From assembly GCF_963676685.1 (NCBI RefSeq), contig NC_092345.1, positions 105,214,001-105,278,000 of the forward strand: 64,000 nucleotides of DNA. Direction: 5' to 3'. The notes below the pieces were generated by a model. It saw only the letters and a list, made by a program, of their open reading frames with translations, did not search any database and was not told the origin of the DNA. The position numbers and the translations under genes were made by a program. Positions within the stretch are counted from its first letter, which is position 1; the number at the start of each line of letters is the position of its first letter. This document shows positions 2,079-49,936 of this stretch, piece by piece. The DNA is from Mytilus edulis (lineage: Eukaryota).

Positions 2079-2299
2079 AATTAGACAACATAACTGACAA
2101 TGTACAGTCATAAAAGAGGGGCTAAAAATACCAGAGGGACAGACAAACTCATAAATCGAAAATAAACTGACAACACCATGGCTAAAAATGAAAAAGACAA
2201 ACAGCCAAATAAGTACACAAGACACAACCCTATCATGATCACACTTATCTGACTAAATGACTACCGACTATATTAGATGACGTGAACGCAAAGCATCCA

Positions 2300-4053: not shown

Positions 4054-4139
4054 CTATTTCATCATTGCATCACCTTTTATACGTCATGAGTTAGATATCT
4101 TGTCTGTCTACTGACTAAAATAAGACGTGTATACCTCGC

Positions 4140-27215: not shown

Positions 27216-27636
27216 ATGGATACCAATCATTCTATATCCTCTCCACACAGTGAACATAATGACACCCATACAGATGCGGGCACAACAGTAAACTTTGACA
27301 ACTTGTATCCTGCCATTGTCCAATGCTTTGCCGTCATTCTCTTCGGTTACATTGCTGGCCGAGCAAATATCATCTCTACCTCACAAGGAAAAGGAATTGG
27401 GACTTTTGTCTCAAAATTTTGTCTTCCTGCTCTGCTTTTCAAAAATATGTGCATTTTGGATTTTTCCATTGTTAACTGGATGTTTTTGATAAGTGTGTTG
27501 ATCTCAAAATCTGTTGTATTTATAATTGTTACAATTGTAACATTAGTTGCCAAGCGACCAGTTAATTATGGATATGCTGGATTGTTTGCTATTTTCTGTA
27601 CACAAAGCAACGACTTTGCTTTAGGATATCCTATAT
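27216..27636 (+). CDS. GPR155: GPR155 coding exon 1
   Basis: Upstream acceptor ttttcttcatttcag ends at 27085 (5' UTR part); ATG 27216; donor T|GTAAGT; phase 1. Confidence 0.93.
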
Positions 27637-30600
27637 GTAAGTACATGTATATATTGGCTCCTACATGTACATAAAGTTATGTTAATGTTGAGAACTTTGT
27701 TTTCAAGAGAAAAAAAAATCAAAGTAAAATATTTAGAGATTAAAATCTCTTGTTTAAAATTTTAAAGAACAACAGAATTTACATAAAATCATACCCTACA
27801 ATGTGAATTTGACATTACATTTATATGTGTAGTAACATGCAGACTACCTGTATTTAAAAAAATGTTTATTCAGTATTAGCATTGTATTAAAAATGTCATT
27901 TACCATGCATGTTGAATTGTCATTACTAACATTTCAAAACTTTTTCTTTTTTTCAGTACAAGCCTTGTACCAAGAAAGCCATCCACAGTACCTGAACTAT
28001 ATCTATCTGATAGCTCCTGTGTCTGTAGTTATTCTCAACCCTATTGGATTTTTATTGTTGGAAATTCAGAAAAAGAGGGAAGGGGATAAAGTAGAAGTGT
28101 CTAAGAGTATAAATGACTCTGGTTCAAAATCTGGGACATGTGCCTTGATACTACATGTGATTAAAGGTGTAATCACGAATCCCATTGTATTCATGACAAT
28201 CATTGGTATTGTTGGAAACTTCATACTACGGAGAAATTTACCTTTGGTTATCTCAGAAATTCTTGATGTTTTAGGTATTATAATTGTTTTTGTTTTATTT
28301 AGAATTAAAACATGTGAATAATATAATAACAAAATGTATTCTTAAAATTTAACATTATTATTTTAGATATATCTATATATAAAGAAGATGTAGTACATGT
28401 ATGAATGCGAATTCGACAACTCTCCATCAGAGACCAAATGACACAGAAACTAACAACTATACATACTATACATACTATAGGTCACTGTACAGCCTTCAAC
28501 AATAAACAAAGGCCTTAACACATAGCCAGCAATATAAGGGGCCGAAATGACAAATGTAAAACAATTCAAAAGAGAAAAATAAATGACCTAATTTATGTAC
28601 AAAAAAAAGTGAATGAAAAACAAATATATGTAAGACAGCAACAAAAAACAACCACTGAATTACAGGTTCCTGACTTGGGACAGCAACATATAGACTGTGG
28701 CAGGTTTGAACTAATTCGAAGGTGCTAACCATCCCCAAAACAGTGGTGCAACAGCACAACAGAAGAACAGACTATGAAACACAATAAACAAATAACTATA
28801 TGCTGTTTTAAATGACAATTATTTATATGTTTCCATGTCTGCTGTACAGATACATGTATATAATTTACTTGTATGTATTATTTACATTTCAATGAAATAT
28901 GATAAAGATATTTCATTTATATTAATGAGATATTAAAAAAATGTTTAACAATACACAGTTCATGTACACATGCATTTTTGTTTTTTCTAGTTTTTAACTG
29001 CAGTTTATAGTGATATCTTTATCTTTACAGGTGATGCTTTCTCTGGAGCAGCTTTATTTTATCTTGGTCTAAGTTTGGTAGGGAAAATATCAGGCCAGAT
29101 GGGTCCACAACTAATTGTACCAGTACTTCTAATAGCAGCTAAAGCGTAAGTATCTAGGATTATGAATAATTAAAACACTTTTACATAGGCCATAACAACA
29201 TTGATTGATTGATTGTTGGTGTTAAATGCCATTTTTGAGCACTTTTAGTTACATCATGGAGGTCAGCTGTTATTGGTATTTTTGAAAGAGTCAGCATACC
29301 TGGAGAGAACCAATTCCTTTGGCAGGAAAAAACATGCAATCTTTGTCAATTAAGATAGTAGTCGTAGGTATCTTCAAATAGCAAGGTTTGAACTCACAAT
29401 CACCTTGTTGACAGGCTAGTGATTACCAAAGATGAACTTGTCAGACAACTAAGGTCCACTGTCAGAATAAGAGGCAGTCTGAAAGTGTCAGCATCATTAA
29501 AAAAATATAGTTACCATGGTTACTGTCATAATGAAAAATTACAGCATTGTTTCCATGACTGATCAAGTGTTCCATATTGTTTTTGGTAATTTTTCTTTTC
29601 AAGTTGAGAATTCAAATATGCTTTACCCTCCAGTTGCAATTTAATGCATATTCAGGATGACTATGAATGCAAAAAGGCACTTTAAATCTACTAATTATCA
29701 CTTATAAATTAAATTAATTATTTATTATATTGATTATTATTCACATTTAAACTATCATATAAAATGTATGTCTAATTAATAGGTTGATTCTGCCATTAAT
29801 AACATGGGAAGTTGTTGGTGCTTTAGAGAAATCCTATAGTGACAAGAATACTACAGAATCATTGAGTATGTTTGGTTTCTTATATGGCACATTCCCAACA
29901 GCGCCATCTGTCTTCTTATATGCCAGCCACTACTCTATTGGACAAGATATTGTAAGTAGCAATTTGAAATATAAAGTGTATTGTAAAAAATATAAGGAGA
30001 CGTGGTATGAATGCCAATAAGACAACTATCCACCAAAGTTGTGAAATTTGTAGAAAATAAAGATACTTGAATTCTCTTTGGTTTTTTTTTATGTATTAAA
30101 TTATTTAAAAACTACACAGGAAAATAAAGTCTATAGATATCTCATTCAAGATAAAGAGAGAAATAAGAATGCAAAACTACAATATGTGTTGAAATAAAAA
30201 CAAGAACCGTGAGATATCATCTATACACATTGATATAAGTGTGTTTAAGATATCTCTATAAAGTAAATGTTGGGCCAAAACTAATTAACACATTATTAAG
30301 GAGAAAACCAAATAAGTTACAATATATTGCAGTAAATATGCAAGTGAAAACCATTCAAATTTGTATTTAATATGATTTTAGGTGGCCACAGGAATGGTAG
30401 CTGGTACATTCTTGTCAGCACCTATCATGTTTGTGTCAGCTAAAATGTTAACAGTTGTAGTGAACAGTGAGCTGGACTATAAAACACTGATGTTAGAGAC
30501 TTCATTTGATACTAGTATCATTAGCTTAGTCTGCAGTGTAAGTAGTAATAAGTATACTTTTTAAATGAAATAAGGTTATAATTAAGGTAGTAGTAAATAA

Positions 30601-33600
30601 AATTATATATGGTATATATTCTTGTGTATTTTCTTTTATTTGAAAATAATAAACAAAAGTGTAGGTTGTTTTTTTTAAAGAACAAAAGTTTCTATTACAA
30701 AAAATGTTGTAATTTTACTGTTTGTATCATTTTTAACTGCTGCCATATCTTCATACCCTTGGCTGGTACTACTTTATCTTGTCTTACTCATGTAACCCAA
30801 GATGATAACCAATTCAATAATTTCAGGGGCTTCTCATGCTCAGGTTTATTTTGGGCATTGGGTAGTAAATTTGAAAATTTAAATGTCTATGAAGCTGTAG
30901 AATCTATATATATAATTGTTGTGCAAGTAGTTTCTAAATGATATATCGTGTCAGAAAAGGCCATATATATTAATCTGTATGTTTGACATCGTTAAGTTAT
31001 TATGTATACTGTTAATTTTTGTTTTATTTTCTTGATGTTTTGGAAGGTAGGTTAATTATATACTTTGTGTAAATATCAAATTTATTTTTTTCCTTCCCCT
31101 GCTTTTATAAACCTTGATTAATAGTATTCAAAGCTTGAAATCTAGTATTGGAGTTAAACTTTGTAGGCAATACTAATAGGCATTTTATAATCCTAGGTTT
31201 AATAGTTTTAGGATGCACATTTTCAGTGGAATATAAGGACTGATAGAATATCATGTTTTAATTTCTGCATAAATATACACACAAAAAAAGGGGTATTTTT
31301 TAATTTCATATTTTTGAGGGCTTTCTTTGTATTTGTTTAGTTAGTACTAGTATGAACCTTTATTAGTTTAAGGGGTTTATGATGCAATGCTATTTTTGTA
31401 ATGCCACATAATCATGTCAAAACAACATTGTTTAGCTATTTTAATTTTATACGACCGCAAACAAAATTTTTGGGATCATATAATGGTATGATGTCGTCGT
31501 CATCTGCCTCGTCTGAAGACACATTGGTTTCTAGACAATAACGTTAGTTTAAGTGAATAGATCTTTATGAAATTTTTTCAGAAGGTTCAATACCACAAAA
31601 GGAAGGTTTGGATTGATTTTGGGGATGATGGTCCCAACTGTTTAGGAATTAGGGGCCCAAAAATGGCCAAAAACCAGCATTTTTCTAGTTTCAGGATAAT
31701 AACTTGTGTATAAGTATTTCTATTGCTCTGAAATTGTACCACAATGTTTACTACCACAAGTAGAAGGTTTGGATTCATATAAGGAGTTATGAGGCCAACG
31801 TTTAGGAATTCAGGGCCAAATAGGGCCAAAAACAAGCATTTTTCTAGTTTCTAGACAATAACTTGTGTGTAATTAACTGTATGGATCTCTCTGAAATTGT
31901 ACCACTGTTCAGGGTTCGACCACTGGGGTCGTATAAAGCTGCGCCCTGCTGAGCACCTGTTTTTTTTCTATGTTCAGTTTCATTGTTGTAAAAACAATGT
32001 CTTGTGATAAACAGACTTTTTTAAAATATGTAAATCTGTGATGCGATGAACAGGTTGTCAAAAGCAAATTCAAGAGAATACAACAGTTAAGATAATATAT
32101 TTAGGGGGTGGTGAAGATTTGTTCTTCTTATTTATACAAGTACCTTTATAAATTTGACAGATATGGGTTGTAGTTTTGATGTTTCTGAGTGGCAGATACA
32201 AGAAAATGCCACATCAGTTTCTTCTTTGTTTCTGTGTGGCTCATGTAAGTACTTATAATAACGTTTTATGATAGAGAACACTGTTAGACTTATAATAACG
32301 TTTTATGATAGAGAACACTGTACACTTATAATAACGTTTTTAGAGAACACTGTACACTTATAATAACGTTTTTAGAGAACACTGTACACTTATTGATTGG
32401 ATTTTGGTTACGCAGATAAGTTTCTACCAATTTACATTTCAAAAACCAAACTTTTACCTCAGAAAAAACAGGTGTTTGTAAATGTTCAGTGAATTCATAA
32501 GTAACTCCCCCCCTCCCCCCTATTTGCAGTAAAGTTTCCGATGAAACCAATATATCAAGAGTTTACTGATGAGTTAATTGAACCAAGAATTACAATGATA
32601 CACATATTTACACATATAGGGACACAAACAGTCAAAATTATACACTTTTGTTACTGATACATTTATAATTTACATTATTTTACTTAATAGGTGTTTAGCT
32701 GTTTAGGACTGATTACGTATGAAGGAACCCACAACCAACCAATCACATGGGTACATCTGGTTCAGTTCACCTTAATTCTAGTCGGAGTTCTGTCAACAAG
32801 ATGTTGGACTGCAGTTATCTCCCTTTGTTTGTACTTCCTCCATTGTAAAAGTTTATGTTTTGTACTCAGAATAAGATGGTGGCTGATACTTGCTGGTTTT
32901 GGGTTGGTATTCCTTTAATATATATTTGATACATGTAGTAGAATACCATTAGAAGTAAACCATTATAGGTCAAGGTCTTCAACACAGAGCAGAAGCTCAC
33001 TTCGAACAGCAAGCTATAAAAGGCACCCAACAAATTACTGGTGTAAAACCACACAAACAGGAAAACCAATAGTCTAATCTTTATAAAAGAAAAGAAACAC
33101 TTATGAACCACATCAACAAAGGCAACTACATCAGATTCCTATACTTTATTATATTTTTTACTGAAATCATTATTTTGACAGCAAATGTTATTGTCAACAC
33201 CTTAAAAATAGGAGCAATCCCCCTTGTACTGTTTACAGGGGATTTGCCTTGGATCCAGTGTGAGTCTTATCTCCATTCATGTCTCTATCTATTTGGTAGA
33301 TAAATTTTGAACTGAAAGGTCCTCCTTGCCAAAAACATTATAAAAGTTATATGCAATGAACTGTTTTCAGCATTATAAGTCTTAATAATAAATTAATCAT
33401 ACATTCTACACCTTTGTGTTGTAGGATATCTATGTTCTGTTCAGCATTTTAAGATTTAGTGATAAATTAATGATGATTTGTTTACCTTTGTAGGATACCT
33501 ATGTTCTGTACAGGTTTATTAATTATGCTGGCTGGACATCACATGCATGCTGAAATAGACCCTTCATTCCATTATGGTGCTGACCAGGTAGGAATACAGA

Positions 33601-36600
33601 TAACAACCATTTATTTTTTATTTTCAATGTTTGCAACAATAAATAAACTTCTAGGTTTATTTTGCTGTTTCTTTAAGTTATAATGTATATCTAAACTAAT
33701 TTAGCACATCAACATTTTGCTTCATAAACTTCAAACTGAAATGTGACTGATTATTTGTCACGGCACTTAGTCAATATTATTGAAATACAACTAACAATAA
33801 TATACTAGTTTACTTAAAGGTTTTTGGGATACGATTGCTTTCAATCAATCTGTAGACTTATACTATTGGCTCAGGGCCATGCCCTCACGTCAACCGTTTT
33901 ATTCTAAACATTCAGCAACATCTCAGATTCTTATGATTGTCTTGCTTTAACCCTTTCGCGGCGAGTGTATCCTTCAGGATACACAATGCGCAGGGCGGAT
34001 GTATCCTTGAGGATACATGATGCGCAGGGCGAGTGTATCTTTCAGGATACATAAATATTGTCCCAATGAAAACCGCAATTTTACAGTATTTGCCGTTCTT
34101 AACAGTTGAAATCAATGCTTCAATCAAAATCTACGATACCTGAGGGTCATATTTTAGTTCTTCAGCAGCATTAATAACATCGTGAAAGGTAAATAAATCA
34201 AATCGGAAAATTTTATTTTCTAAAATTAGAACCGGAAACACGTTTTGAGGTCATGTGAGGATTCAAAATGGCTCCTCTCGATAACAAGCAGTGGAAGTAC
34301 GGCTGTTTTCGCTCTTTTAAAGGAGCCCTTCACATTTCATAGGTATTGTTGGATATATAATAATAATAAATGATTCAATATATATTTATAAATAATGAAA
34401 GCGATCATTGGTAGGCCCTTTTCCCCACAAGTAGGCACAAGACAGGTAAGACTTGCATGTAGTTTTAATTTTTTGTCACCGGTTTCGAGGGGAAAAGATA
34501 ATTGGGTTTGGAATGTACGGGAAAATGCACGAAATTAATTAAGGAAGTACAAGTTCGTCTGCTACTATTGCAGTCTAAAAATGTCGTCAGACGAATCTGA
34601 CGGCGACTTTGAAGGGTTTAGTGAAACTGATGTTATAAATGCCGAACAAGAGGTTTTGGCCGCTGAGGAAAGGTTGCGAGTTATTTTGAGTGAACAGGGG
34701 ATAGGGGATGACAGTGATGGAGATCTCAATGAGTCTGAAAATGAGGATGAAGGGGAGGAGGAGGTGCATATTGATGAGAGAGGAGATGGTGGCGATGGAT
34801 GGCATTCTAGGTTTGATATTTATGAAAGGGGTTTACCACATTTATTTAACCCTCGTGGCAATACTGGGCCAAGTCGCGTCATGGGTGCTGAAAAGGAAGT
34901 CTTAGATTTTTGGCAACTCTACATGGGTGATCAATTTCTTGAGTTTCTTATTAACCAAACAGATAGTTATGCCAACTATAACATTCAGCATAGGCCAAAC
35001 GATAACAAAATGCCTTGGAGTATCCCAACTTTACCAGAAATTAAAGCATTTCTTGGTCTAACCTACCAAATGGGAATAAATCGCAAACCATCTACTAAAT
35101 TATATTGGTCAACCGATCCAGTTATGGTCACCCCAATATTTTCATCAACAATGACCAGAGACAGATACACCCAAATATTGCGGTACCTCCATTTCTCTAA
35201 CATTGCAAATGAACCTAGACAAGGAGAACCAAATTATGATCCTTTATATAAAATTAAACCTGTAGTTAACCATTTAAATAATAAATTTGGTTTAGAATAT
35301 ATACCAAAAAGAAATGTCACCATTGATGAGTGTATGGTACCTTTCAAAGGGAGAACATTATTGAAACAATACTTACCAAGTAAACCACATAAATGGGGCG
35401 CAAAGGTTTGGATGCTGGCAGAATCTGCCAACAGCTACATACAATATATAGATGTGTATCCAGGTAGAACAGTTAGAACAGAGGGCAGTCTGGGTTCTTC
35501 GGTGGTAAAGAATTGTTTAGAAGGTGCAAATATTGCAGGTCAGGGCTATCATGTTTATACCGATAACTTTTTTACATCGCCTAACCTTTATTTAGAGTTG
35601 TGGGAGAATTATGACACAGCTGCATGTGGAACAGTCCGTAACACTAGGGCAGGTTTGCCAAAAGATATCATGTGTAAAAAGCCAGTTAATGTTGTAACTC
35701 GTGGAGACCATCAATTCAGGCAAAAAGGTGCTTTGTTAGCGGTATCTTGGAAGGACAAAAAAACTGTATCAGTATTGTCAACAATACACAATGAAAGCAT
35801 TGGTCAAGTTACTCGTTCAGTAAATGTTGACGGCCAATTTGCAAGACAGGAGTTTAATTGCCCATCTGCTATTGTTGACTACACTTGTAATATGGGTGGT
35901 GTTGACAAAGCAGATCAATACATTCAGTATTATTGTTATCACCAGAAAACCTTAAAATGGCCAAAAAAAGTATTTTTTAGTCTACTTGAGATGGTTAAAT
36001 TTAATGCCTACAGATTATTCACATTAAGTCCAAACCATTCTTCAAACCTCACATTCCTTCAGTTTTCTTGTTTGCTGATAAAAGGATTGATCAATGGATA
36101 TTCTGCCGGGGTACGGAGAGGAAGGCCATTACTTGCCCCTGATCAGAGATTGATTCAAAGACACATGCCTACAACTTTAAATAGTAAAGGCAGGTGTCAT
36201 GTCTGTTACATGAGACAGAAGAATGGCAAGCAAGACAATATAAGACAAACTAAATATGGGTGTTCAGTATGTGGCAAACACCTCTGTATGCCTCAATGCT
36301 TCACAATTTACCATACAGAGAAGAATTACTGCTAGACTGACTTTGTGTTCTTTGTTTAATACCGTTTATTGTTCCAGTTTTATTCATGGATTTGTGTTAT
36401 AACTTTTAAACTTTTTTCAAATTGACCTTTAATTAACTGAATAATCATGACAATTGGTGTAAAAAATGTGAGGAAAAGCAAGAGAATTACAAAGAAATAA
36501 TCCTTGAGTGAATGGCACACAATTCATAGGTGAGTCACTGAATGTTGGTTGTTTTTTGTTCTTGTTCGTTTAAATCTTATTGTTGAAAATTTATAAATTA

Positions 36601-39600: not shown

Positions 39601-42600
39601 CCGGGATTGGCTATTTTTAAAGTTGAGTGACTATTCAGATTATTACATTTTGCATATGCAGTTGAATTAGTTTTGAAAATAATACTATCCAGCTGTACCA
39701 GGGCTGCCAAAAATGCGTGAGACTCATGCATGTTCATGCTTATTTGCGGCAGTATCCTTGGATCTATTTTTTTCCCTCTTTGATCTTTTCAATTTTGGCC
39801 AAATCTCAGGCATTTGCTTAATGAAAAGTTGACAGAACTGCTATACATGTGTCAATGAAAACTATGGCAATCATATCCCTCAGAGCATTCTGCTCTTTGA
39901 TTTCCCTTCTTTATTTAAAATTTTATAAGATAGAAATGCACTGTACAAAATAGAAACTTCTAGTATCTCTTTGTTTTCTTGTAAAATATTAACATATTGA
40001 CAGCTTCAGACTACACTGAAATGTAACACAGATTGTCTATATTATGTGAAACAGCTGAGACATGTGTTATAATAACTACATATGTCTCACCTGTGTCATA
40101 TTTTATGATGGGGGAAACAAGAATCAATGAGGAATTAAAATAGATACATATAGTTTTGAGAAATGATATACACTTTAAAATGTGTAGTGAACCAACACTA
40201 ACAGCAGAGACAGAGGAAAAAATATATGACAAGTCTTACTCTCCAATAATGTTTCTTTTCACAAGTCATCCTGTCATTCTTAATTCTATATAGTACTGTT
40301 TACTTTATGTATACATATATTTCTATTTATTAGCTAATTTATAATGTCTGTAGTGAGAGATATTTTATCACACTAGATGCAGTGGTAGAATATAAATGTA
40401 TATATTATTATACAGATTTTATTTGTTTTACAGACCATCTTATCCCTGATAATCTTGACTGTGTGTAGTGCAATAAACATTGTCTGTCTAATATTAAAAC
40501 AAAGGAATTCATCAGCGTATTTGAAATTACGAGAACATAAGAATGGTGACATATTAAACAGTAAGAGAAAGAAAAATGATGGAATGAAGGACGACAGTCG
40601 CTGTAGGTTGTTAGGAAGGAGAGACAGTAATGAAGAAGATTATAGATCTATTAATGACTGTAACAATTGTGATAATTCATGTGAAGGTAAATACTGTTCA
40701 GAAAGGATGTTTAAGATAAGATTTGAATCAATCCAAAAAACAACAATAGATTTAGAAATAGGTTTTACTAATCACTTTGTGCAAAAAATATAGAATACAG
40801 AATAACAATGAAACCTGTAAAAGCATATATTATATTTTCATTTCCAGTCCCATTTCACTGAAGATTTCTTTGTTCTGTTAGATTAAATTAAATAGATTGC
40901 TTAATCAATCGTGAAAGAAAAGATATTTGTTTTTTTGTTTTAGTTCAAAGGTTAGGTTGAAAAGATTTCTGTAGACTGTATAATTTTAAAGATGATACTT
41001 ACACAATGTGATCCTTTGATATAACCTTTAAAGGTAATTTTGAAAGTAAAACTTGAATAATATGCTCTTTTGTATAATTTGTTTGTCTCCTGCCATTATT
41101 TATATTTCTTTATAGGAGTAGGTAGAACCAGTATTGAAGATATAGTGCCTTTCCCTAAAGAGACAGAAAGTCTGATATCTGACACGTCCAGTACTACTAG
41201 TGACAGCCTAACAGAGACGTATGAAGTAGAGCAGTGTGTGTATGGCACTTGTGGTATAGAGCAGAGACGTAGGTGTGCGGGTCTACTCAGGAAGTATAAT
41301 ACATCTGTCGTAGCGATACCGGATGAAGATTCTGTAGGCAGCAATCGATCAAGGAAAGTTAAAGATGATTTCCAAAGTAACAGATTTATGTTGATGTTGG
41401 TTCTCTGTCAAGTTTCTATGTTTATGGTAAGTGTCAAGTTTCTATGTTTATGGTAAGTGTCAAGTCTCTATGTGTATGTTAAGTGTCAAGTTTCTATGTG
41501 TATGGTAAGTGTCAAGTTTCTATGTGTATGGTAAGTGTCAAGTCTCTATGTTTATGGTAAGTGTCAAGTTTCTATGTTTATGGTAAGTGTCAAGTTTCTA
41601 TGTTTATGGTAAGTGTCAAGTTTCTATGTATATGGTAAGTGTCAAGTTTCTATGTTTATGGTAAGTGGCAGCAGTTGATGTTGATGTTGGTTCTCTGTCA
41701 AGTTTCTATGTTTATGGTAAGTGGCAGCAGTTGATGTTGATTCTCTGTCAAGTTTCTATGTTTATGGTAAGTGGCAGCAGTTGGTGTTGATGTTGGTTCT
41801 CTGTCAAGTTTCTATGTTTATGGTAAGTGGAAGCAGTTGATGTTGATGTTGGTACTATGTCAAGTTTCTATGTTTATGGTAAGTGTCAAGTTTCTATGTT
41901 TATGGTAAGTGTCAAGTTTCTATGTATATGGTAAGTGTCAAGTTTCTATGTTTATGGTAAGTGTCAAGTTTCTATGTTTATGGTAAGTGTCAAGTTTCTA
42001 TGTTTATGGTAAGTGGCAGCAGTTGATGTTGATGTTGGTTCTCGGTCAAGTTTCTATGTTTATGGTAAGTGGCAGCAGTTGGCAGGGTTTCCCCTGGGTC
42101 AATTATTTTTTTCGCCACCTCTTTCGCCAAAACAATATATTTTTCGCCACTTGATTATTTTTTTCGCCAAGTGACATAAATATATTTTTCGTTTAAAATT
42201 TACCTTTTTTCTAACCCCCCCCCTTTTTCCCCCACTACTTCCCTTTAAAAAGATGATTTCGCGCCATTGTATCTATGATTATTCTCTCAAACTTATTTTA
42301 GAGTCTACATTTTAATGAATAAACACTAAGCATTTACTTTAAAACAACAGATTTTTTTAACTTAAAAGGGAAAAACATTCATAGTATTTTAAACAGCTTT
42401 TCTAAATGAGGGGGCCACTATACTTTAAATAATAAAGAAGATATAAGTCCTGGAATATAACAAAATTCATGGACATGTTTTGATCATATAATACCATTAT
42501 ACTTCGTTGGGAAAGTTGATTTCTCATTTCATGTGTAGTCATTACATTGAAGGGTTACTCTCATTCGAGGGATTGTTCCCAACCTTTTGGACAGTTTTCT

Positions 42601-45600
42601 TTTCTTGACCATCGTAAATGAAAAAGTTGAGACGTAATTTTATGCTTGAAACACGTGTGTCACTCAAACGACTTTACAGTAGACTCCCTAAGCAATTACC
42701 TATATTAAAGTCAAAGGATAATTAAAGTTTTAAATCAGAGATTTTCTTGCTTTTGAACATTTTTCGTCACAACAACAGCTTTCTTTTCTAAACTATCGTT
42801 AAAAGGAGAGGTGACGTCAAAAGTTAGCTCCAAACACGTGCGTCGCAAAGTGTGAATAAATTATGTATGTGACATTTAGCGGAAGCCATTTAACCATATC
42901 ATTTTTTCAAACAATACAATCAACACCTTTATTAATTAGTCCTTTGTTGTCGATAGCTATAAAATGCAATCAGCTGATTATTGATTTTCTGTCCAAATCT
43001 TATTGAGGTCAAGGTGAACTCCGAGTATTGTCTGATCGAGTAAAGTCCGAGAAACTCGGAAAAAAGTAAATAAACAAGATGTAGGAAATAAATCGTTATA
43101 AATATTTCTTTCGCCAAATTCTTTCACAAATGACAATTTTTTATCGCCACAATTATTATTTTTTCGCAAATTGCGAAAATGGCGACCGCCAGCGGAAACC
43201 CTGGCAGTTGGTGTTGATGTTGGTTCTCTGTCAAGTTTCTATGTTTATGGTAAGTGGCAGCAGTTGATGTTGATGTTGGTTCTATGTCAAGTTTCTATGT
43301 TTATGGTAAGTGGCAACAGTTGATGTTGATGTTGGTACTATGTCAAGTTTCTATGTTTATGGTAAGTGTCAAGTTTCTATGTATATGGTAAGTGTCAAGT
43401 TTCTATGTTTATGGTAAGTGGCAGCAGTTGATGTTGATGTTGGTTCTCTGTTAAGTTTCTATGTTTATGGTAAGTGGCAGCAATTAAGGTTGATGTTGGT
43501 TCTCTGTCAAGTTTCTATGTTTATGGTAAGTGGCAGCAGTTGGTGTTGATGTTGGTTCTCTGTCAAGTTTCTATATTTATGGTAAGTGGCAGCAGTTGAT
43601 GTTGGTACTATGTCAAGTTTCTATGTTTATGGTAAGTGTCAAGTTTCTATGTTTATGGTAAGTGTCAAGTTTCTATGTATATGGTAAGTGTCAAGTTTCT
43701 ATGTTTATGGTAAGTGTCAAGTTTCTATGTTTATGGTAAGTGTCAGCAGTTGATGTTGATGTTGGTTCTTTGTCAAGTTTCTATGTTTATGGTAAGTGTC
43801 AAATTTCTATGTTTATGGTAAGTGTCAAGTTTCTATGTTTATGGTAAGTGTCAGCAGTTGATGTTGATGTTGGTTCTCTGTCAAGTTTCTATGTTTATGG
43901 TAAGTGTCAAGTTTCTATATTTATGGTAAGTGTCAAGTTTCTATGTTTATGGTAAGTGTCAGCAGTTGATGTTGATGTTGGTTCTCTGTCAAGTTTCAAT
44001 GTTTATGGTAAGTGTCAGCAGTTGATGTTGATGTTGGTTCTCTGTCAAGTTTCTATGTTTATGGTAAGTGTCAGCAGTTGATGTTGATGTTGGTTCTCTG
44101 TCAAGTTTCTATGTTTATGGTAAGTGGCAGCAGTTGATGTTGGTTCTCTGTCAAGTTTCTGTGTTTATGGTAAGTGTCAAGTTTCTATGTTTATGGTAAG
44201 TGTCAAGTTTCTATGTTTATGGTAAGTGGCAGCAGTTGATGTTGATGTTGGTTCTCTGTCAAGTTTCTATGTTTATGGTAAGTGGCAGCAATTGATGTTG
44301 ATGTTGGTTCTCTGTCAAGTTTCTATGTTTATGGTAAGTGTCAGCAGTTGATGTTGATGTTGGTTCTCTGTCAAGTTTCAATGTTTATGGTAAGTGTCAG
44401 CAGTTGATGTTGATGTTGGTTCTCTGTCAAGTTTCTATGTTTATGGTAAGTGGAAGCAGTTGATGTTGATGTTGGTTCTCTGTCAAGTTTCTATGTTTAT
44501 GGTAAGTGGCAGCAGTTGATGTTGATGTTGGTTCTCTGTCAAGGTTCTGTGTTTATGGTAAGTGGCAGCAGTTGATGTTGATGTTGGTTCTCTGTCAAGT
44601 TTCTGTGTTTATGGTAAGTCAGCAATTATTTGTAGTCCGCTTGAGATTTCCAGATACGTCTGTTCTGTTTTGGGGGGCTTTGGCATAAGAGACAAAATAC
44701 TGGATTGACAATGACAAGATAGAAAATATGGTGTTTTTTTTACTATTTCAGTAAATATCAGCTTCTCTTCTGATATCTCAATTCACATCAATTTCAATTT
44801 TTCACCAAATCCAATTTTAACAGAGTGCATGCTAGAACAAAGAAAATGTTGTCATGTTTGTTGTAACAAATATTATTAATATATTAATATTTTATTTTTT
44901 GTAGGGACTTTTTTTGTGTACATGGAGACTGTTTAATAAAGTTACAACAGGAACATACGTAGAAGTAGAATTCCTTGACGGTGTGATGAACTATGGTCAG
45001 GTAAGTCTGTTTGATAGTTTGCTGTCTCATGGTCATGTAGCCTCTCTTTTAATTCATATAAAATTCATGTTTCATACATTAGTTAACTACTGATTCTACA
45101 GATGAACTGAGTGTTATATACATGTACAATTTTTCTCTAGTCAAGACTTTGTCTTTCTTTTTCAATGATTGCAAAAAAGATGATTTCTTTTAATGTGATT
45201 TCATCTGGCATGATTGCTCTTTTTAAGATGTCATGCTAACATATTTAGAGGAACACCAAAAAAATGAACTCAAACAAACCAGTCCACATGTTGATTATAA
45301 AAAGACAACCAATTGTTTTAAAAATGTTTAAAAAGACTAAAAGTTAGAAAAGTTCACTTATATTGTAAATTGAGAAATGTCATATTGAAAAACAAGGAAA
45401 ATGAGACAGGATTATTATTACATTGGTTAGAATTTTTGTTTCTGAATGCAGTATTTGTATGCAGTGTTTCATAAAAATACATGAAATAAATCTTTCATAT
45501 ATGCTTATTTTTTGTACAGTTGCATTAACATCTACATGCACAAATTACAAAAAATTTGAGCATCAAGTTGGTATTTATAAAAGTATTAAACTATTAAAAA

Positions 45601-48369
45601 AAAAGTTCCATGGACAAAACCATTTTTTTTTCCAGGGATTTATTGAACAAAACTGCTTTATTTTGTAGGGATTTATTGAACAAAACTACTATATTTTGTA
45701 GGGATTTATTGAACAAAACTACTTCATTTTGCAGGGATTTTTTTAACAAAACTACTATATTTTGTAGGGATTTATTGAACAAAACTATTTTATTTTGTAG
45801 GGATTTATTATATTTGCGATATTTGGGTTTGATACCAGATTAATATTCTTGCCATGTATAAAAAGGTATGTACAATGTTATTCTCTAATAGATATTTTAT
45901 ACTGGTGGTCAGACACAATAGTTCTAGTTTAGGAAAGTACAATGATGGTTTAGTATATAAAAAATCTGTTCAATCTTTACATGGTGGAAGGGGAAAATAG
46001 TACTTTTGTAGCTGGAATTTTTTGTGTGAATAATACCTTGAACTGATAATCAGTTTATTTCTATTGAAAATTGGTAAATGAGACTTAAATTAAACCTGGT
46101 CAAAAATTAATTTTCCCATATGCCATAACCAATTATTTCGAAAATTGTTTTCCCTTTAATTTCTTTTAAGACAAGGATTTAAGATCCATTACAAGAACCA
46201 GTTCAGAAAATATTGTTTAAGAACTATCGACAATTTATGAAACTTTCAATAGGGGAAATCCCTCCTCTGAAATTAAAACAAAACGGTATAAGAGGTGGTG
46301 AATTTGCGATTTCTGGCATGTTACACTCCTTTTAGGTTGGGACAAGTGAGCTTTTTATCAGACTACTTCTTATAGGACTTATTCCCATACAAAAGAGGAT
46401 TTTACCCATTTTCTATTGACCTGAAACATATAGATAATCTTTTTTATAATCCAGCCCATACAATATTCCTTTATAATGGTTAATTTACTTTTAAAATGCA
46501 TTGAAGATGTGAAACTTATAAATGATTTTAAAATTATACCACGTTAGTCAATATGTATATAGATGTAATGGTTATATTGTAGCTTGGTCAACTTTAAACG
46601 TAAATTGTTAAAAAGGTAACCGTCTTATATGTTGTAATGCATGGCATGTTGTAATCGATGATATGGCAGTGTTATCTTGGGTTCAAATGTACTTTAAATT
46701 GCATGTTAATTTGTTCAGTGCTCCTATGATGGGATTTATTTGTATTCAATGTGGCTAAAATTATCAGAGGGACAAATATTTTTCCTTCATCTATCAATAT
46801 ATATATGTGTACCTAGATATGTTTTAAAACCAGAGATTGCAGATGTTCAATTTTATATATTTTTTTTTAATTGTTCTTGTTTGAATGAAATGCTAGTTAG
46901 TCATCCTATATAGTATAGCACTTTCATAGAACATGGCATTTCTAAAAGATGTTATCACTTGATATTCCTAAATGTTATCATATGACACTCCTACAAAACA
47001 AGTTCCTTTATATTATAATGGTCCTGGGGGCCCTGGTAACCGAGTAGTCTTAAGTAATACAACTACTGTATTACAAGCCAGTCAACACCAAGGTTGTGGG
47101 TTTGAATTTCAAACATGGTAGGTGAGCTTGACTCTAATCTTAATTGACTACAATTGTCAGTTTTCCAAAGGTAGGTTGTTCTATCCTGGCACTGGGATTC
47201 TTCCACCAATAAAACCTGACCACCATGAAGTAGCACAATAGTGGCGTTAAAACACCAATCAAACATTTGACACTCCTACAACAAATTATCACATGACACT
47301 CCTACAACAAATTATCACATGACACTCCTACAACAATTTTTAAAGAATTCTTTCTATCAGTAATCTATACCAGTGGTTAGTTATGCAGATAAATTGAACC
47401 AACATGTTATGTTTGTCTATAATTACATTGATACTAAATTAAGTAAGATATTTAATTATATAAGTATTTTCTATGAATAAAAACTCATTTTCATTTCATT
47501 ATATGAATATCTGAATTTATAGAATAACTGATTTCTTGATTGTGTGTATATTACAGATGGCGTAAACTTGTTTATGGTGTAGAAATTGTGACACTTCCAG
47601 ATTCCTCCGAACTTGATGAAGAAACAATGCATTTATGTGAACAGTTTAAAAAATACCACAAAAATAATTGTTCTAAAGCTATTGTTAAAGATCTAAAGTA
47701 AGTACTGTTTGCTATTAATTAGGACATTCAAAAGCAAAACCCATTGATGTTTTGGGAATATTTCCTACTTAACACAGTTATTCACACAGTAATTATTCCT
47801 GGTGATTTGGTTATCCATGTAAAACAAAATGTTATAAATCAAAACTTATAGAATAAATCAAAAAAAAAAGAAAAGATATGATGAATTAAAAAATTAATGA
47901 CAAAAGAATTTGAATTTTAAATGATTAAATTATTAGTTTAAAACAAATTGTTACTTTTTGTTTTTTTATGCATTATAAGTTTTTGTGAATATGAATGATA
48001 GGAGATGTTGGGTATTCATTAATCTGACAGCAACCCAAATGACATAAAAATTTAACAAACATTTAGTATTATGAAGACAATGAATAGTAATTCACGTATT
48101 ATTAATGACATAGATGTTTTTTTCACAGAAATATAACAAAGATTTATTATAATTTCAGATATAGGTTAAAAGAATATAAACAAGTATTTACAGGAACCGA
48201 CATGTGTGATTGGTTATTAGAAGTTGGTTTAGCCCATGATAGGGGAGAGGCCATAGAATATGGACGTACTCTTGTTACAGGACACATTGTTAGTCATGTG
48301 ACCAAGGAACATCATTTTCATGACCTGCCATATTTTTACAGTTTTATTGAAGAAGAGGAATATGATTGA
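27216..48369 (+). CDS. GPR155: GPR155/LYCHOS (lysosomal cholesterol sensor: permease-like TM domain + GPCR-like TM domain + C-terminal DEP domain), 14 coding exons, 881 aa
   Basis: join(27216..27636,27957..28274,29031..29145,29783..29951,30382..30537,32161..32244,32691..32902,33494..33587,40434..40686,41116..41426,44905..45000,45801..45865,47557..47697,48159..48369). All introns are GT-AG, phases are consistent, total 2646 nt. Motifs recognised: LYPAIVQCFAVILFGYIAG, FCLPALLFKNM, FCTQSNDFALGYPI, LYGTFPTAPSV, YVEVEFLDGVMNYGQG, and DEP domain FTGTDMCDWLLEVGLAHDRGEAIEYG...HHFHD. Confidence 0.95.
27957..28274 (+). CDS. GPR155: GPR155 coding exon 2
   Basis: tttttttcag|TA CAA GCC; QALYQESHPQYLNYIYLIAPVS..NPIVFMTIIG; donor G|GTATTA. 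Confidence 0.92.
29031..29145 (+). CDS. GPR155: GPR155 coding exon 3
   Basis: ctttacag|GT GAT GCT; DAFSGAALFYLGLSLVGK..LIAAK; donor GC|GTAAGT. Not in the ORF track. Confidence 0.92.
29783..29951 (+). CDS. GPR155: GPR155 coding exon 4
   Basis: taatag|G TTG ATT; LILPL..FLYGTFPTAPSVFLYASHY; donor ATT|GTAAGT. Confidence 0.92.
30382..30537 (+). CDS. GPR155: GPR155 coding exon 5
   Basis: ttttag|GTG GCC; VATGMVAGTFLSAPIMFVSA; donor AGT|GTAAGT. Confidence 0.92.
31445..31962 (+). mobile_element. HINE-like element (second family) with ~2 internal repeats
   Basis: ttttatacgacc.. / ..ggtcgtataaa sub-terminal inverted repeat, GTC microsatellite, internal duplication. Confidence 0.65.
32161..32244 (+). 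CDS. GPR155: GPR155 coding exon 6
   Basis: ttgacag|ATA TGG; IWVVVLMFLSGRYKKMPHQFLLCFCVAH; donor CAT|GTAAGT. Confidence 0.9.
32251..32392. repeat. 33-37-bp tandem repeat (4 units) starting directly after the exon-6 donor
   Basis: ACTTATAATAACGTTTT(ATGA)TAGAGAACACTGT x4. Confidence 0.9.
32691..32902 (+). CDS. GPR155: GPR155 coding exon 7
   Basis: ttaatag|GTG TTT; hydrophobic TM segments; donor GG|GTTGGT chosen to match the phase of the next exon. Confidence 0.85.
33494..33587 (+). CDS. GPR155: GPR155 coding exon 8
   Basis: cctttgtag|G ATA CCT; GIPMFCTGLLIML..IDPSFHYGADQ; donor CAG|GTAGGA. Confidence 0.9.
33961..34052 (+). repeat. Three ~34-bp sub-terminal direct repeats of the piggyBac, each with palindrome TGTATCCT-NN-AGGATACA
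   Basis: gcgagtgtatccttcaggatacacaatgcgcagg x3, read directly. Confidence 0.85.
34581..36335 (+). CDS. piggyBac transposase (PGBD4-like, DDE_Tnp_1_7), intact, 584 aa
   Basis: Acidic N-terminus; DDD triad in TIDECMVPFKG, YTDNFF, MGGVDKADQ; KPHKWG; C-terminal cysteine-rich domain RCHVC..CSVCGKHLC..CF..YH; no stops or frameshifts. Confidence 0.96.
   Translation: MSSDESDGDFEGFSETDVINAEQEVLAAEERLRVILSEQGIGDDSDGDLNESENEDEGEEEVHIDERGDGGDGWHSRFDIYERGLPHLFNPRGNTGPSRVMGAEKEVLDFWQLYMGDQFLEFLINQTDSYANYNIQHRPNDNKMPWSIPTLPEIKAFLGLTYQMGINRKPSTKLYWSTDPVMVTPIFSSTMTRDRYTQILRYLHFSNIANEPRQGEPNYDPLYKIKPVVNHLNNKFGLEYIPKRNVTIDECMVPFKGRTLLKQYLPSKPHKWGAKVWMLAESANSYIQYIDVYPGRTVRTEGSLGSSVVKNCLEGANIAGQGYHVYTDNFFTSPNLYLELWENYDTAACGTVRNTRAGLPKDIMCKKPVNVVTRGDHQFRQKGALLAVSWKDKKTVSVLSTIHNESIGQVTRSVNVDGQFARQEFNCPSAIVDYTCNMGGVDKADQYIQYYCYHQKTLKWPKKVFFSLLEMVKFNAYRLFTLSPNHSSNLTFLQFSCLLIKGLINGYSAGVRRGRPLLAPDQRLIQRHMPTTLNSKGRCHVCYMRQKNGKQDNIRQTKYGCSVCGKHLCMPQCFTIYHTEKNYC
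38037..38194. mobile_element. Tc1/mariner-like MITE
   Basis: Perfect 15-bp TIR CACCTTATCGCTATT flanked by TA on both sides. Confidence 0.8.
38201..38765. mobile_element. Non-autonomous Kolobok-like element
   Basis: TTAA TSD on both sides; TIR GGAGGCTCGCGGGTATAA / GGGGGCTCGCGGGTCTAA; purine termini point to Kolobok rather than piggyBac. Confidence 0.82.
40434..40686 (+). CDS. GPR155: GPR155 coding exon 9
   Basis: gttttacag|ACC ATC; TM helix followed by a cytosolic loop; donor G|GTAAAT. Confidence 0.88.
41116..41426 (+). CDS. GPR155: GPR155 coding exon 10
   Basis: ctttatag|GA GTA; SIEDI..Cys-containing loop..RFMLMLVLCQVSMFM; donor ATG|GTAAGT, which is the first unit of the donor array. Confidence 0.88.
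41407..44620 (+). repeat. Tandem array of the GPR155 exon-10 3' end plus 5' splice site (26-bp and 56-bp units, ~50 GTAAGT donors)
   Basis: Short unit CAAGTTTCTATGTTTATG|GTAAGTGT; long unit adds CAGCAGTTGATGTTGATGTTGGTTCTCTGT; interrupted by a hAT element. Confidence 0.97.
42083..43203. mobile_element. Non-autonomous hAT-type element inserted into the donor array
   Basis: TIR CAGGGTTTCCCCTGG / CAGGGTTTCCGCTGG; 8-bp TSD GCAGTTGG (42075..42082, 43204..43211); sub-terminal TTCGCCA repeats. Confidence 0.92.
44905..45000 (+). CDS. GPR155: GPR155 coding exon 11
   Basis: ttttttgtag|GGA CTT; GLFLCTWRLFNKVTTGTYVEVEFLDGVMNYGQ; donor CAG|GTAAGT. Confidence 0.92.
45612..45809 (+). repeat. Six 33-bp tandem copies of the GPR155 exon-12 3' splice site
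   Basis: AG|GGATTT with AG ending at 45635, 45668, 45701, 45734, 45767 and 45800. Confidence 0.95.
45801..45865 (+). CDS. GPR155: GPR155 coding exon 12
   Basis: ttttgtag|GGA TTT ATT; GFIIFAIFGFDTRLIFLPCIK; donor AG|GTATGT. Confidence 0.9.
47025..47265 (+). mobile_element. tRNA-derived SINE-like repeat
   Basis: GGGGCC..TGGTAACCGAGT (A-box-like), GGTTTGAAT (B-box-like), ..CCACCAATAAAAC..AAAACACCAATCAA tail; related copies at ~29200..29450(-) and 24770..24890(+). Confidence 0.55.
47557..47697 (+). CDS. GPR155: GPR155 coding exon 13
   Basis: ttacag|A TGG CGT; WRKLVYG..LCEQFKKYHKNNCSKAIVKD; donor AA|GTAAGT. Confidence 0.9.
48159..48369 (+). CDS. GPR155: GPR155 last coding exon (DEP domain)
   Basis: aatttcag|A TAT AGG; VFTGTDMCDWLLEVGLAHDRGEAIEYGRTLVTGHIVSHVTKEHHFHDLPYFYSF; stop TGA 48367..48369. 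Confidence 0.93.
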
Positions 48370-49139
48370 AATTATGAAAATAATTTTGATATGATTGAAA
48401 TATAGTGCTAACTTTTGAAATTATCCAATCTGTTTATAAATGTTTTCTTTAAATATGAGTTGTCTCCCATTGTTGCTGCGTTATCCTTTCTGGTATTTCA
48501 CACGGTTGAGTTCATTTAAAACATTCAGTTTCCCTGTTATTGATACTTTTTAAGAAAGAGAAATCGTTCAGAAAAGTGGTCAAAAGAAGCCAACAAATTA
48601 TAAATACTAGTAGATAAAACAAATTATATCTTAAATCATGAATCATAAATTTAACATATTTACATTAAATGGGAGATAACTCTACACTTATTAGATGAAA
48701 AGAAAGAACTCAAGTCTAAAGTAATAACTTAATATTTCCATAGTTATTTTATATGTTAATTAAAACCAGTAATTAATATCAAACAAATTCCATATTGATA
48801 CTAAAAGGTCCTTTGGAGAATATTTTGGTACTGAAACCATTTTAATTGATATTTGATGGCTAATATTGACCCTTTATACTCCTACTCTTTTCCTGATGTG
48901 GAAAGGAATCATTCATCAAAATCATTTTTAAGAAGGATTGCATTTTGAATCTGCATTTTACTGATAAGAGAACCTGTATTTTTCTAGTCAATACATAACA
49001 CATTTTCATACTGACAGGAGGTGAGACACTTTTTGAATTATTTTGTTGAAAATGTTACTGATGTCAGTATCAGACCAATAGATAGATAGATCATGTATCA
49101 GACCCAGGGTAACATAAGATATTTTTGTAACAATGACAT

Positions 49140-49936
49140 ATTTGTATGCCCCACCTACGATAGTAGAGGGGCATTATGTTTTCTGGTCTGTGCGTCCGCC
49201 TGTACGTTCGTCTGTCCATCCGTTCTTCCCACTTCAGGTTAAAGTTTTTGGTCAAGGTAGTTTTTGATGAAGCTGAAGTCCAATCAACTTGAAACTTAGT
49301 ACACATGTTTCTTATGATATGAACTTTCTTATATTAAAACCAAATTAGACTTTTGACCCCATTTTCATGATCCACTGAATATAGAAATTAAAATGTGAGT
49401 TTCAGGTTAAAGTTTTTGGTCAAGGTGGTTTTTGATGAAGCTGAAGTCCAATCAACTTGAAACTTAGTACACATGTTCCTTATGATATGATCTTTCTTAT
49501 TTTAAAACCAAATTAGACTTTTGACCCCATTTTCATGGTCCACTGAACATAGAAATTAAAAGAGTGAGTTTCAGGTAAAAGTTTTTGGTCAAGGTAGTTT
49601 TTGATGAAGCTGAAGTCCAATCAACTTGAAACTTAGTACAGATGTTCCTTATGATATGATCTTTCTTATTTTAAAACCAAATTAGACTTTTGACCCCATT
49701 TTCATGGTCCACTGATCATATAAAATGAAAGTGTGTGTTTCAGGTTAAGGTTTTTCGGTCAAGGTAATTTTTGATGAAGTTTAAGCCCAATCAACTTGAA
49801 ACTACACTTGTTCCCTATTGGTTGATCTTTTTACTTTTAAGGCCTAATTAGATTTTTTACCCAATTTCACGGTCCATTGATAAAGGTAAATGATAATGGG
49901 AGTGGGGTATCCGTGTACTTTGGACACATTCTTGTT
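49140..49936 (+). mobile_element. Helentron-associated (HINE/pearl-like) non-autonomous element with four ~169-bp internal tandem units
   Basis: 5' atgccccacc..ggggcat sub-terminal inverted repeat, GTCY microsatellite, units starting ~49235/49403/49572/49741, and T-rich insertion site. Confidence 0.75.

What the first reader, a model, noticed from the sequence alone, without database searches (positions are those of the whole stretch)
27216..48401. Recurrent seeding of tandem duplications at exon boundaries across one gene: a candidate genome-wide process
Seen: independent, sequence-unrelated repeats sit at the exon-10 donor (~50 copies), exon-12 acceptor (6), exon-8 acceptor (2), immediately after the exon-6 donor (4) and over the stop codon (2). 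A weak echo lies before exon 3 (tttatagtgatatcttt vs tttacaggtgatgcttt). In the splice-site cases the working site is the exon-proximal copy and the expansion runs into the intron. Inference: about five events at the boundaries of 14 exons seems too many for random placement. It suggests a mechanism targeting exon-intron junctions (polymerase pausing or R-loops at splice sites, nucleosome-edge repair, or RNA-templated repair), with exon definition letting the products persist. It could also supply raw material for intron and exon gain.
Basis: partly seen in the sequence, partly recalled or inferred. Interest (0 to 1): 0.85.

Follow-up and report, generated by a model that had tools for sequence, protein, structure and literature searches.

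The report
Splice-junction minisatellites in mussel GPR155
Four separate short tandem duplications in one bivalve gene (GPR155/LYCHOS) copy or directly abut its own exon edges and splice sites; this kind of repeat is already known (amphioxus "mirages", the human F7 repeat), and whether the genome makes such repeats preferentially at splice junctions is suggested here but not proven.

Summary
The window holds a 14-exon GPR155/LYCHOS orthologue. Three of the six claimed repeats clearly contain splice junctions:
- The exon-10 donor array has 51 identical ATGGTAAGT sites, in units of 26 and 56 bp, and is split by a later transposon insertion.
- The exon-12 acceptor array has six acceptors in register, 33 bp apart.
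- The exon-8 acceptor has a two-copy duplication of about 70 bp.

A fourth array starts right after the exon-6 donor. The stop-codon repeat and the exon-3 echo are at chance level.

All three large arrays are unique in the 1.37-Gb genome, so they arose locally. Every decoy site leads to a premature stop.

Within the gene, 4 of 8 local duplications touch a junction, against about 0.5 expected (P about 0.001). That test is post hoc.

Genome-wide word counts show arrays carrying the consensus donor octamers 3-5 times more often than matched controls. An acceptor octamer shows no excess, a poor-donor variant is also raised, and one control is inflated by a transposon family.

The class is known: mirages, and the F7, 6-16 and CBS repeats. 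Other windows of this genome gave the scan the same finding. A junction bias is plausible, and its mechanism is open.

The parts
27216..48369 (+). GPR155/LYCHOS-like gene, 14 coding exons: 27216-27636, 27957-28274, 29031-29145, 29783-29951, 30382-30537, 32161-32244, 32691-32902, 33494-33587, 40434-40686, 41116-41426, 44905-45000, 45801-45865, 47557-47697, 48159-48369 (stop)
   Evidence: tblastn with orthologue P0004, exon by exon. All introns are GT-AG and the phases close on 2,646 nt. Pfam Mem_trans matches exon 1 and DEP matches the last exon. Human GPR155/LYCHOS PDB chains match at E 1e-41 and 5e-14.
41388..42082 (+). Exon-10 donor minisatellite, proximal block. It begins inside exon 10; the authentic donor GT is at 41427-41428. 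Units are 26 bp, then 56 bp.
   Evidence: TRF, sequence, donor count and spacing. The exon tail is conserved coding sequence in P0004.
42083..43203 (.). Non-autonomous element with terminal inverted repeats (hAT-like), inserted into the array. It has perfect 10-bp terminal inverted repeats and an 8-bp target-site duplication, GCAGTTGG, at 42075-42082 and 43204-43211.
   Evidence: Inverted repeat I1. The family has many copies: 2,044 first-look candidates, with scored copies 85-97% identical.
43204..44619 (+). Exon-10 donor minisatellite, distal block, mostly 56-bp units. It ends at GGTAAGT followed by unique intron sequence.
   Evidence: TRF, sequence. All genome matches to the unit lie inside this window.
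45614..45809 (+). Exon-12 acceptor minisatellite: six 33-bp units, each ending in YAG followed by GGATTT. The last copy is the real acceptor, and exon 12 starts at 45801.
   Evidence: TRF, sequence. The five decoys run into an in-frame stop. The array is unique in the genome.
33389..33522 (+). Two-copy tandem duplication across the exon-8 acceptor. The decoy AG is at 33423-33424 and the real AG at 33492-33493.
   Evidence: Local alignment scores 45; none of 500 shuffles reached it. Sequence.
32245..32393 (+). Exon-6 donor GTAAGT (32245-32250), followed at once by 4.2 copies of a 32-36-bp unit. The internal junctions are degenerate, donor-like (TGTTAG, TGTAC).
   Evidence: TRF, sequence, alignment. 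The array is unique in the genome.
48361..48401 (+). 13-nt direct repeat 28 bp apart, over and after the stop codon. It is at chance level.
   Evidence: Sequence. It scores 14, against a background in which 8.8% of positions reach that score.
29004..29040 (+). 'Echo' in front of exon 3. It is at chance level.
   Evidence: Sequence. It scores 10, reached by 75% of background positions.

Best explanation
These are 'mirage'-type minisatellites: local DNA-level tandem duplications whose unit straddles, or in one case abuts, an exon-intron junction of a conserved gene, and which later grew by slippage or unequal exchange.

**Shown:**
- Each unit holds real exon sequence plus the adjoining splice site.
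- The units are unrelated to each other, and the three large arrays are unique in the genome.
- The exon-10 array has the nested, interspersed variant units (26 and 56 bp) typical of minisatellite turnover.
- The exon-10 array is older than a transposon insertion inside it.
- Only the exon-proximal splice site gives the protein that is collinear with orthologues. All 50 decoy donors, the 5 decoy acceptors of exon 12 and the exon-8 decoy lead to a frameshift or a stop.

**Inferred:**
- The arrays persist because splice-site choice favours the exon-proximal copy and mis-spliced RNA is degraded, so they are nearly neutral.
- The clustering at junctions probably reflects a real, moderate junction bias of such repeats in this genome. 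This gene shows about 7-8 times the random expectation, and consensus donor words show 3-5 times the control rate genome-wide.
- The cause of that bias is not identified.
For: - Anatomy of the arrays.
- Local origin.
- Exon tails are conserved coding sequence, and the exon 10-11, 11-12 and 7-8 joins are collinear with P0004.
- Transposon insertion with a target-site duplication inside the array.
- In-gene permutation: 0.46-0.56 expected, 4 observed.
- Genome word counts. Distinct arrays on contigs C1-C3 were AGGTAAGT 25 and AGGTGAGT 10. Eight non-donor words gave 3-12.
- Per 10,000 occurrences, both donor words gave 6.6 arrays. The four controls of known frequency gave 1.35-1.47.
- Precedents with the same anatomy and proximal-site use: PMC1557585 (F7, 6-16, CBS, LMNB2, PDGF), PMC3087553 and PMC3902484 (amphioxus mirages).
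Against: - No RNA evidence could be obtained, so use of the proximal sites rests on protein collinearity alone.
- The in-gene statistic is post hoc.
- The genome word test is indirect, because no annotation or flanking sequence was available. It shows no excess when matches are counted instead of arrays (373 against 663, and 1,671 against 1,860).
- The acceptor word shows no excess (11 against 10 arrays).
- The poor-donor word AGGTTAGT is also high (12 arrays, 4.7 per 10,000). Part of the signal may therefore come from the sequence itself and not from the junction.
- The control AGCTAAGT reaches 9 arrays on C1 through a dispersed family.
- The exon-6 array does not contain an intact donor.
Confidence: 0.6

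Rival explanations
1. Chance clustering plus ascertainment. The genome is rich in minisatellites, arrays fall at random in introns, and this gene was noticed because several happened to lie at exon edges.
For: - A systematic 200-kb sample has 23 TRF arrays per 100 kb, covering 6.1% of the sequence. By arithmetic from that density, a 14-exon gene has a chance of a few in a thousand of holding three or more junction arrays, so some such genes must exist.
- Two of the six claimed cases are at chance level.
- The match-level word counts show no donor excess.
- The acceptor word shows none.
- The null for single words is overdispersed.
Against: - P(>=4 of 8) is 0.0004-0.0012 using this gene's own repeat load.
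- Array-level donor counts are 25 and 10. Four controls of known frequency predict about 5 and 2.
- The donor arrays have unrelated units, so they are not one family.
Confidence: 0.25
2. A mutational process aimed at exon-intron junctions. Breaks or stalls tied to transcription or splicing would be repaired as small tandem duplications, which then expand.
For: - Junction excess in this gene.
- Donor-word excess genome-wide.
- Two different unit sizes (26 and 56 bp), with different breakpoints on both sides, are centred on the same donor.
Against: - No test here addresses any such mechanism.
- A general junction process should also raise acceptor words, and TTTTCAGG is at baseline, although fewer than about a fifth of its occurrences are likely to be real acceptors.
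- The poor-donor word is raised too.
- The 26-bp unit could equally have come from the 56-bp unit by an internal deletion.
Confidence: 0.2
3. RNA-templated origin: splicing intermediates or circular intron RNA are reverse-transcribed into arrays.
For: Genome-wide, some donor-word arrays have units that read GTAAGT...YAG head to tail, like whole short introns.
Against: In this gene every unit crosses the splice site, carrying exon and intron sequence on both sides. It therefore cannot come from a molecule cut at that site. The head-to-tail units are 34-51 bp, short for real introns.
Confidence: 0.03
4. The decoy arrays are kept by selection because they do something, such as binding U1 or U2 factors to tune splicing or to protect the long transcript.
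For: All 51 donor 9-mers in the exon-10 array are identical, although other parts of the units vary.
Against: - Homogenisation by unequal exchange explains the identity without selection.
- The decoys next to exon 6 have decayed.
- No conservation or expression data could be obtained.
Confidence: 0.05

Closest known systems
Amphioxus 'mirages' (Adh3, globins BflGb6 and BflGb9, troponin C, PGBD5)
   Same: [quoted passage not shown] Units range from tens of bp to about 160 bp, and several can occur per gene. Regular splicing is kept. They have been proposed as a source of new introns, and their mechanism is called unclear (PMC3087553, PMC3902484).
   Different: This is a different phylum (a bivalve). 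One array here reaches about 50 copies and has a transposon inside it. Length polymorphism and somatic instability, shown for Adh3, could not be tested here.
Human VNTRs whose first monomer spans an exon-intron boundary (F7 IVS7 37 bp x5-9; 6-16/IFI6 with 25 pseudo-donors; CBS; LMNB2; PDGF)
   Same: The authentic donor is followed by identical pseudo-donors in the intron. The most upstream site is the one normally used (PMC1557585).
   Different: Those are single loci per gene, and their splicing was measured. Here there are four loci in one gene, two of them on the acceptor side, and no RNA data.
Intron gain by tandem duplication of an AGGT-containing segment (Rogers model; Hellsten et al. 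2011)
   Same: A tandem duplication creates extra splice sites that allow the duplicate to be spliced out (PMC3265369, PMC4974935).
   Different: Here the duplications sit on existing junctions and lengthen existing introns. No new intron or exon is shown.
Tandem repeats enriched towards intron ends in plants and green algae
   Same: This is a genome-wide, non-random excess of repeats near intron-exon junctions (PMC3887541).
   Different: That survey is dominated by short motifs, and it did not show units copied from the junction itself.

Membership tests
Mirage / junction-spanning minisatellite | Head-to-tail tandem copies | tested here: met
   TRF and alignments for the exon 10, 12, 6 and 8 loci.
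Mirage / junction-spanning minisatellite | The monomer next to the exon contains real exon sequence plus its splice site | tested here: met
   Met for exon 10 (donor), exon 12 and exon 8 (acceptors). The exon-6 array only abuts the donor. The stop-codon and exon-3 cases fail.
Mirage / junction-spanning minisatellite | Made locally from the gene's own sequence, not a dispersed satellite or transposon repeat | tested here: met
   Whole-genome searches with the three large arrays find only this locus. The exon-8 duplication was not searched.
Mirage / junction-spanning minisatellite | Normal splicing is kept and the authentic, exon-proximal site is used | not testable with these tools
Indirect support: only the proximal sites give a protein collinear with P0004, and all decoys give premature stops.
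Mirage / junction-spanning minisatellite | Copy-number instability or polymorphism | not testable with these tools
   No reads and no second haplotype were available. The unit search found no alternative contig.
   Only an annotation-free proxy could be run. Donor octamers gave 6.6 arrays per 10,000 occurrences against 1.35-1.47 for controls. The acceptor word was at baseline, a poor-donor variant was raised, and one control was inflated by a family.
   No expression or chromatin data could be reached.
Intron gain by tandem duplication | A new intron whose two splice sites both come from the duplicated AGGT segment | not tested
   The arrays lie in introns that separate conserved exon blocks. 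Intron-position conservation was not compared with other species.

The most novel reading that the evidence does not exclude
In this mussel genome, small tandem duplications are seeded several-fold more often on exon-intron junctions, above all on 5' splice sites, than elsewhere in introns. The cause would be a mutational process tied to transcription or splicing, and it would continuously supply decoy splice sites and raw material for new introns and exons.
Probability: 0.25. Interest if true: 0.75.

Novelty: new member of a known kind. Interest (0 to 1): 0.45.

Why it matters
Junction-spanning minisatellites have been described gene by gene, in amphioxus and in a few human genes, and their cause has been called unclear. 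If a chromosome-scale mussel genome carries them at several times the chance rate, it offers hundreds of natural cases. Those cases could be used to test three things:
- how splice sites are chosen among identical copies;
- whether duplication is biased to junctions;
- whether such arrays seed new introns or exons.

This single gene adds a clear example, with about 50 identical donors and six in-register acceptors. It does not add a new principle.

Tried and rejected
Loci, and later the matched letters, were withheld.
  - As a result, no flanks of the genome-wide donor arrays could be read.

**Analyses that gave nothing usable**
- Counting splice motifs in TRF consensus units of the 264 kb in hand: too few arrays to say anything.
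- The match-level comparison of donor words with reversed words: it is dominated by a few long arrays, so it was replaced by counts of distinct arrays.
- Normalising by word frequency is imperfect, because AGGTTAGT is high per occurrence.

**Readings considered and dropped**
- The exon-10 unit as a dispersed satellite: rejected.
- The exon tail as derived from the repeat: rejected, because the tail is conserved coding sequence.
- Strong microhomology at the ends of the 26-bp unit: none was seen when reading.

- The spliced protein was never joined or searched. Exons were searched one by one by reference, and only lengths and phases were summed.
Full report
**The gene.** Pfam finds Mem_trans in the first ORF and DEP in the last. 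A whole-library search with exon 1 returned full-length relatives of 820-941 aa. tblastn of these against the window lays out 14 blocks on the + strand. I refined the blocks to GT-AG boundaries whose phases close on 2,646 nt, ending at the TGA at 48367-48369. Exon 1 matches residues 29-153, and the last exon residues 780-836, of human GPR155/LYCHOS structures. The spliced protein was never joined or searched, and only lengths and phases were summed.

**Exon-10 donor.**
- Exon 10 ends with the codons for ...QVSMFM, followed by GTAAGT (41427).
- The orthologue P0004 reads ...QVSMIV GIFLCSWRL across the same place. The window joins ...QVSMFM to GLFLCTWRL of exon 11 without a gap. The exon tail is therefore old coding sequence, and the first donor is the functional one.
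- From 41388 to 44619 the exon tail plus the start of the intron is repeated. There are 51 exact ATGGTAAGT sites, spaced 26 bp (24 times), 56 bp (21 times) or 50-52 bp (4 times).
- The 56-bp unit reaches about 40 nt into the exon and about 16 nt into the intron. The 26-bp unit reaches 20 nt into the exon and 6 nt into the intron.
- Of the 50 decoys, 34 shift the frame and 16 are in frame but cross a stop.
- One gap of 1,185 bp in the array is a 1,121-bp element. It has perfect 10-bp terminal inverted repeats and an 8-bp target-site duplication, and it belongs to a family with about 2,000 candidate copies. The array was therefore already there when the element landed.
- A genome search with two units finds only this array.

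**Exon-12 acceptor.** Six 33-bp units each end in a pyrimidine tract and YAG, followed by GGATTT. The last is the real exon start at 45801. Read from any of the five upstream copies, the frame hits a stop within 3-10 codons, in four of the five at the TAG that forms the next acceptor. The array is unique in the genome.

**Exon-8 acceptor.** 33389-33452 is an imperfect copy (about 80%, with one 5-nt gap) of 33463-33522. The copied segment holds 31 nt of intron and the first 29 nt of exon 8. None of 500 shuffles reached this score. The decoy would add 69 nt that contain a stop (my reading of the frame).

**Exon-6 donor.** A 32-36-bp unit in 4.2 copies begins at 32251, the base after GTAAGT. Its internal junctions (TGTTAG, TGTAC before ACTTATAA) weakly resemble the donor. 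This is compatible with an ancestral unit that included the donor and with decoys that have since decayed, but the evidence is thin. The array is unique in the genome.

**The weak cases.** I scored every junction's 40-mer for a local copy within 400 bp and did the same every 5 bp along the window.
- The stop-codon repeat scores 14, which 8.8% of non-array positions reach. With 28 sites tested, two or three such hits are expected.
- The exon-3 echo scores 10, which 75% of positions reach.
- Both are at chance level.

**Is the placement unusual within the gene?**
- The same scan finds eight local-duplication loci in the gene at a score of 20 or more.
- One of them (31465-31910) is a diverged 160-bp repeat that looks transposon-borne.
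- Four loci touch a junction.
- I placed eight seed units of the observed lengths at random in the gene. This gave 0.46-0.56 junction hits on average, with P(>=4) of 0.0004-0.0012 and P(>=3) of 0.005-0.016.
- This is a post hoc test on a gene chosen because it looked odd.
- A systematic 200-kb sample of contig C1 has 23 arrays per 100 kb. At that density some genes with three junction arrays must exist by chance.

**A genome-wide proxy.** The tool supplies the reversed word as a control. Match counts are dominated by a few long arrays and show no donor excess (1,671 against 1,860, and 373 against 663). I therefore counted distinct arrays on contigs C1-C3, about a quarter of the genome.

| Word | Type | Arrays on C1-C3 | Genome-wide occurrences | Arrays per 10,000 occurrences |
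|---|---|---|---|---|
| AGGTAAGT | consensus donor | 25 | 38,102 | 6.6 |
| AGGTGAGT | consensus donor | 10 | 15,075 | 6.6 |
| TGAATGGA | control | 10 | 73,856 | 1.35 |
| TAGTGAAG | control | 4 | 29,251 | 1.37 |
| TGTAGAAG | control | 8 | not counted | - |
| AGTGAAGT | control | 3 | not counted | - |
| TAGGAAGT | control | 5 | not counted | - |
| TTTTCAGG | acceptor | 11 | 80,590 | 1.36 |
| GGACTTTT | reversed acceptor | 10 | 67,874 | 1.47 |
| AGGTTAGT | poor-donor variant | 12 | 25,639 | 4.7 |

- AGGTATGT has 12 arrays on C1 alone.
- An independent estimate from the random sample gives at most 8.75 arrays per 10,000 positions once low-complexity hits are included.
- The donor arrays have unrelated units. 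Half carry C at position -3, and several read like GTAAGT...YAG units placed head to tail.

Three caveats weaken this proxy:
- The acceptor word is at baseline.
- The poor-donor word AGGTTAGT is also raised.
- AGCTAAGT reaches 9 arrays on C1 because it sits in a dispersed family of 22-bp inverted arrays, so single-word counts are overdispersed.

I read this as suggestive of a 3-5-fold donor-side excess. It is not proof that arrays are seeded at real junctions.

**Mechanism.** Every unit crosses its splice site, so the template was DNA or unspliced sequence, not a splicing intermediate. The interspersed 26- and 56-bp variants and the later transposon insertion fit ordinary minisatellite turnover. 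That the working site is the exon-proximal copy, and that the arrays extend into the intron, follows from the gene still being intact. It agrees with what was measured for the human F7, 6-16 and CBS repeats (PMC1557585). Nothing here tests R-loops, pausing or nucleosome edges.

**Comparison with what is known.**
- Human examples with identical pseudo-donors are listed in PMC1557585.
- Intron gain from such duplications is an established model (PMC3265369, PMC4974935).
- Repeats enriched near intron ends are reported for plants and algae (PMC3887541).

**Earlier notes of this scan.** I read these after my own word tests. They report the same class in other windows of this genome, with follow-up estimates of a four- to ten-fold excess, and they gave me the 'mirage' lead, which I then checked in the papers. 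They are not independent evidence. They call the genome Mytilus, which I did not verify. The 1.37-Gb size is, from my own knowledge of mussel genomes, compatible with that.

**Verdict.** It is a clear new example of a known kind of repeat. A genome-wide junction bias is plausible (about 60%). A mechanism aimed at junctions remains a hypothesis (about 20-25%).

Noticed in passing
window 34581-36335 (+), intron 8: An intact 584-aa piggyBac-type transposase ORF (Pfam DDE_Tnp_1_7, E 4.7e-76, plus the C-terminal zinc finger) lies inside the GPR155 intron, in the sense orientation.
   Followed up: no
window 42083-43203: A high-copy non-autonomous element with 10-bp terminal inverted repeats and an 8-bp target-site duplication (hAT-like). 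It has about 2,000 candidate copies in the genome at 85-97% identity.
   Followed up: partly
window 31465-31910 and 49233-49880: Diverged tandem repeats of about 160-169 bp. Similar 147-169-bp arrays are frequent in the random C1 sample (L016, L018, L024, L026, L028, L029). They are probably a transposon-associated satellite class.
   Followed up: no
G000:C1:2834435, C1:112040926, C1:122940523, C2:10709442, C2:95821364, C3:103518366, C9:60916776: Tandem arrays whose 34-51-bp units begin with GTAAGT and end in a pyrimidine-rich tract plus CAG. Acceptor-like and donor-like sites therefore abut, like recursive splice sites or whole mini-introns placed head to tail. Their flanks could not be read.
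   Followed up: partly
whole genome G000: The consensus donor octamer AGGTAAGT is only half as frequent as its reversed word (38,102 against 73,856). AGGTTAGT is three times rarer than its reversal (25,639 against 75,305). AGGT-NAGT words thus appear depleted in bulk DNA.
   Followed up: no
G000:C1:20777855, C1:36651277, C1:48899837, C2:18211303, C2:77035968 and others: A dispersed family of paired, oppositely oriented arrays with 22-bp period that contain AGCTAAGT. It is presumably the internal repeat of a transposon (letters withheld).
   Followed up: no
window 11954-13063 (-) and 15413-16246 (+): Two long single-exon ORFs lie upstream of GPR155. One is a 369-aa cysteine-rich N-terminus followed by beta-propeller-like repeats, possibly of the TRIM/NHL kind. 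The other is a 277-aa secreted coiled-coil-like protein. Neither was searched.
   Followed up: no
window 2283-4054: A 1.75-kb minisatellite with 27-, 34- and 61-bp periods lies just downstream of a sequence that another reader noted as hammerhead-like. No exon edge is evident at either end of it.
   Followed up: partly
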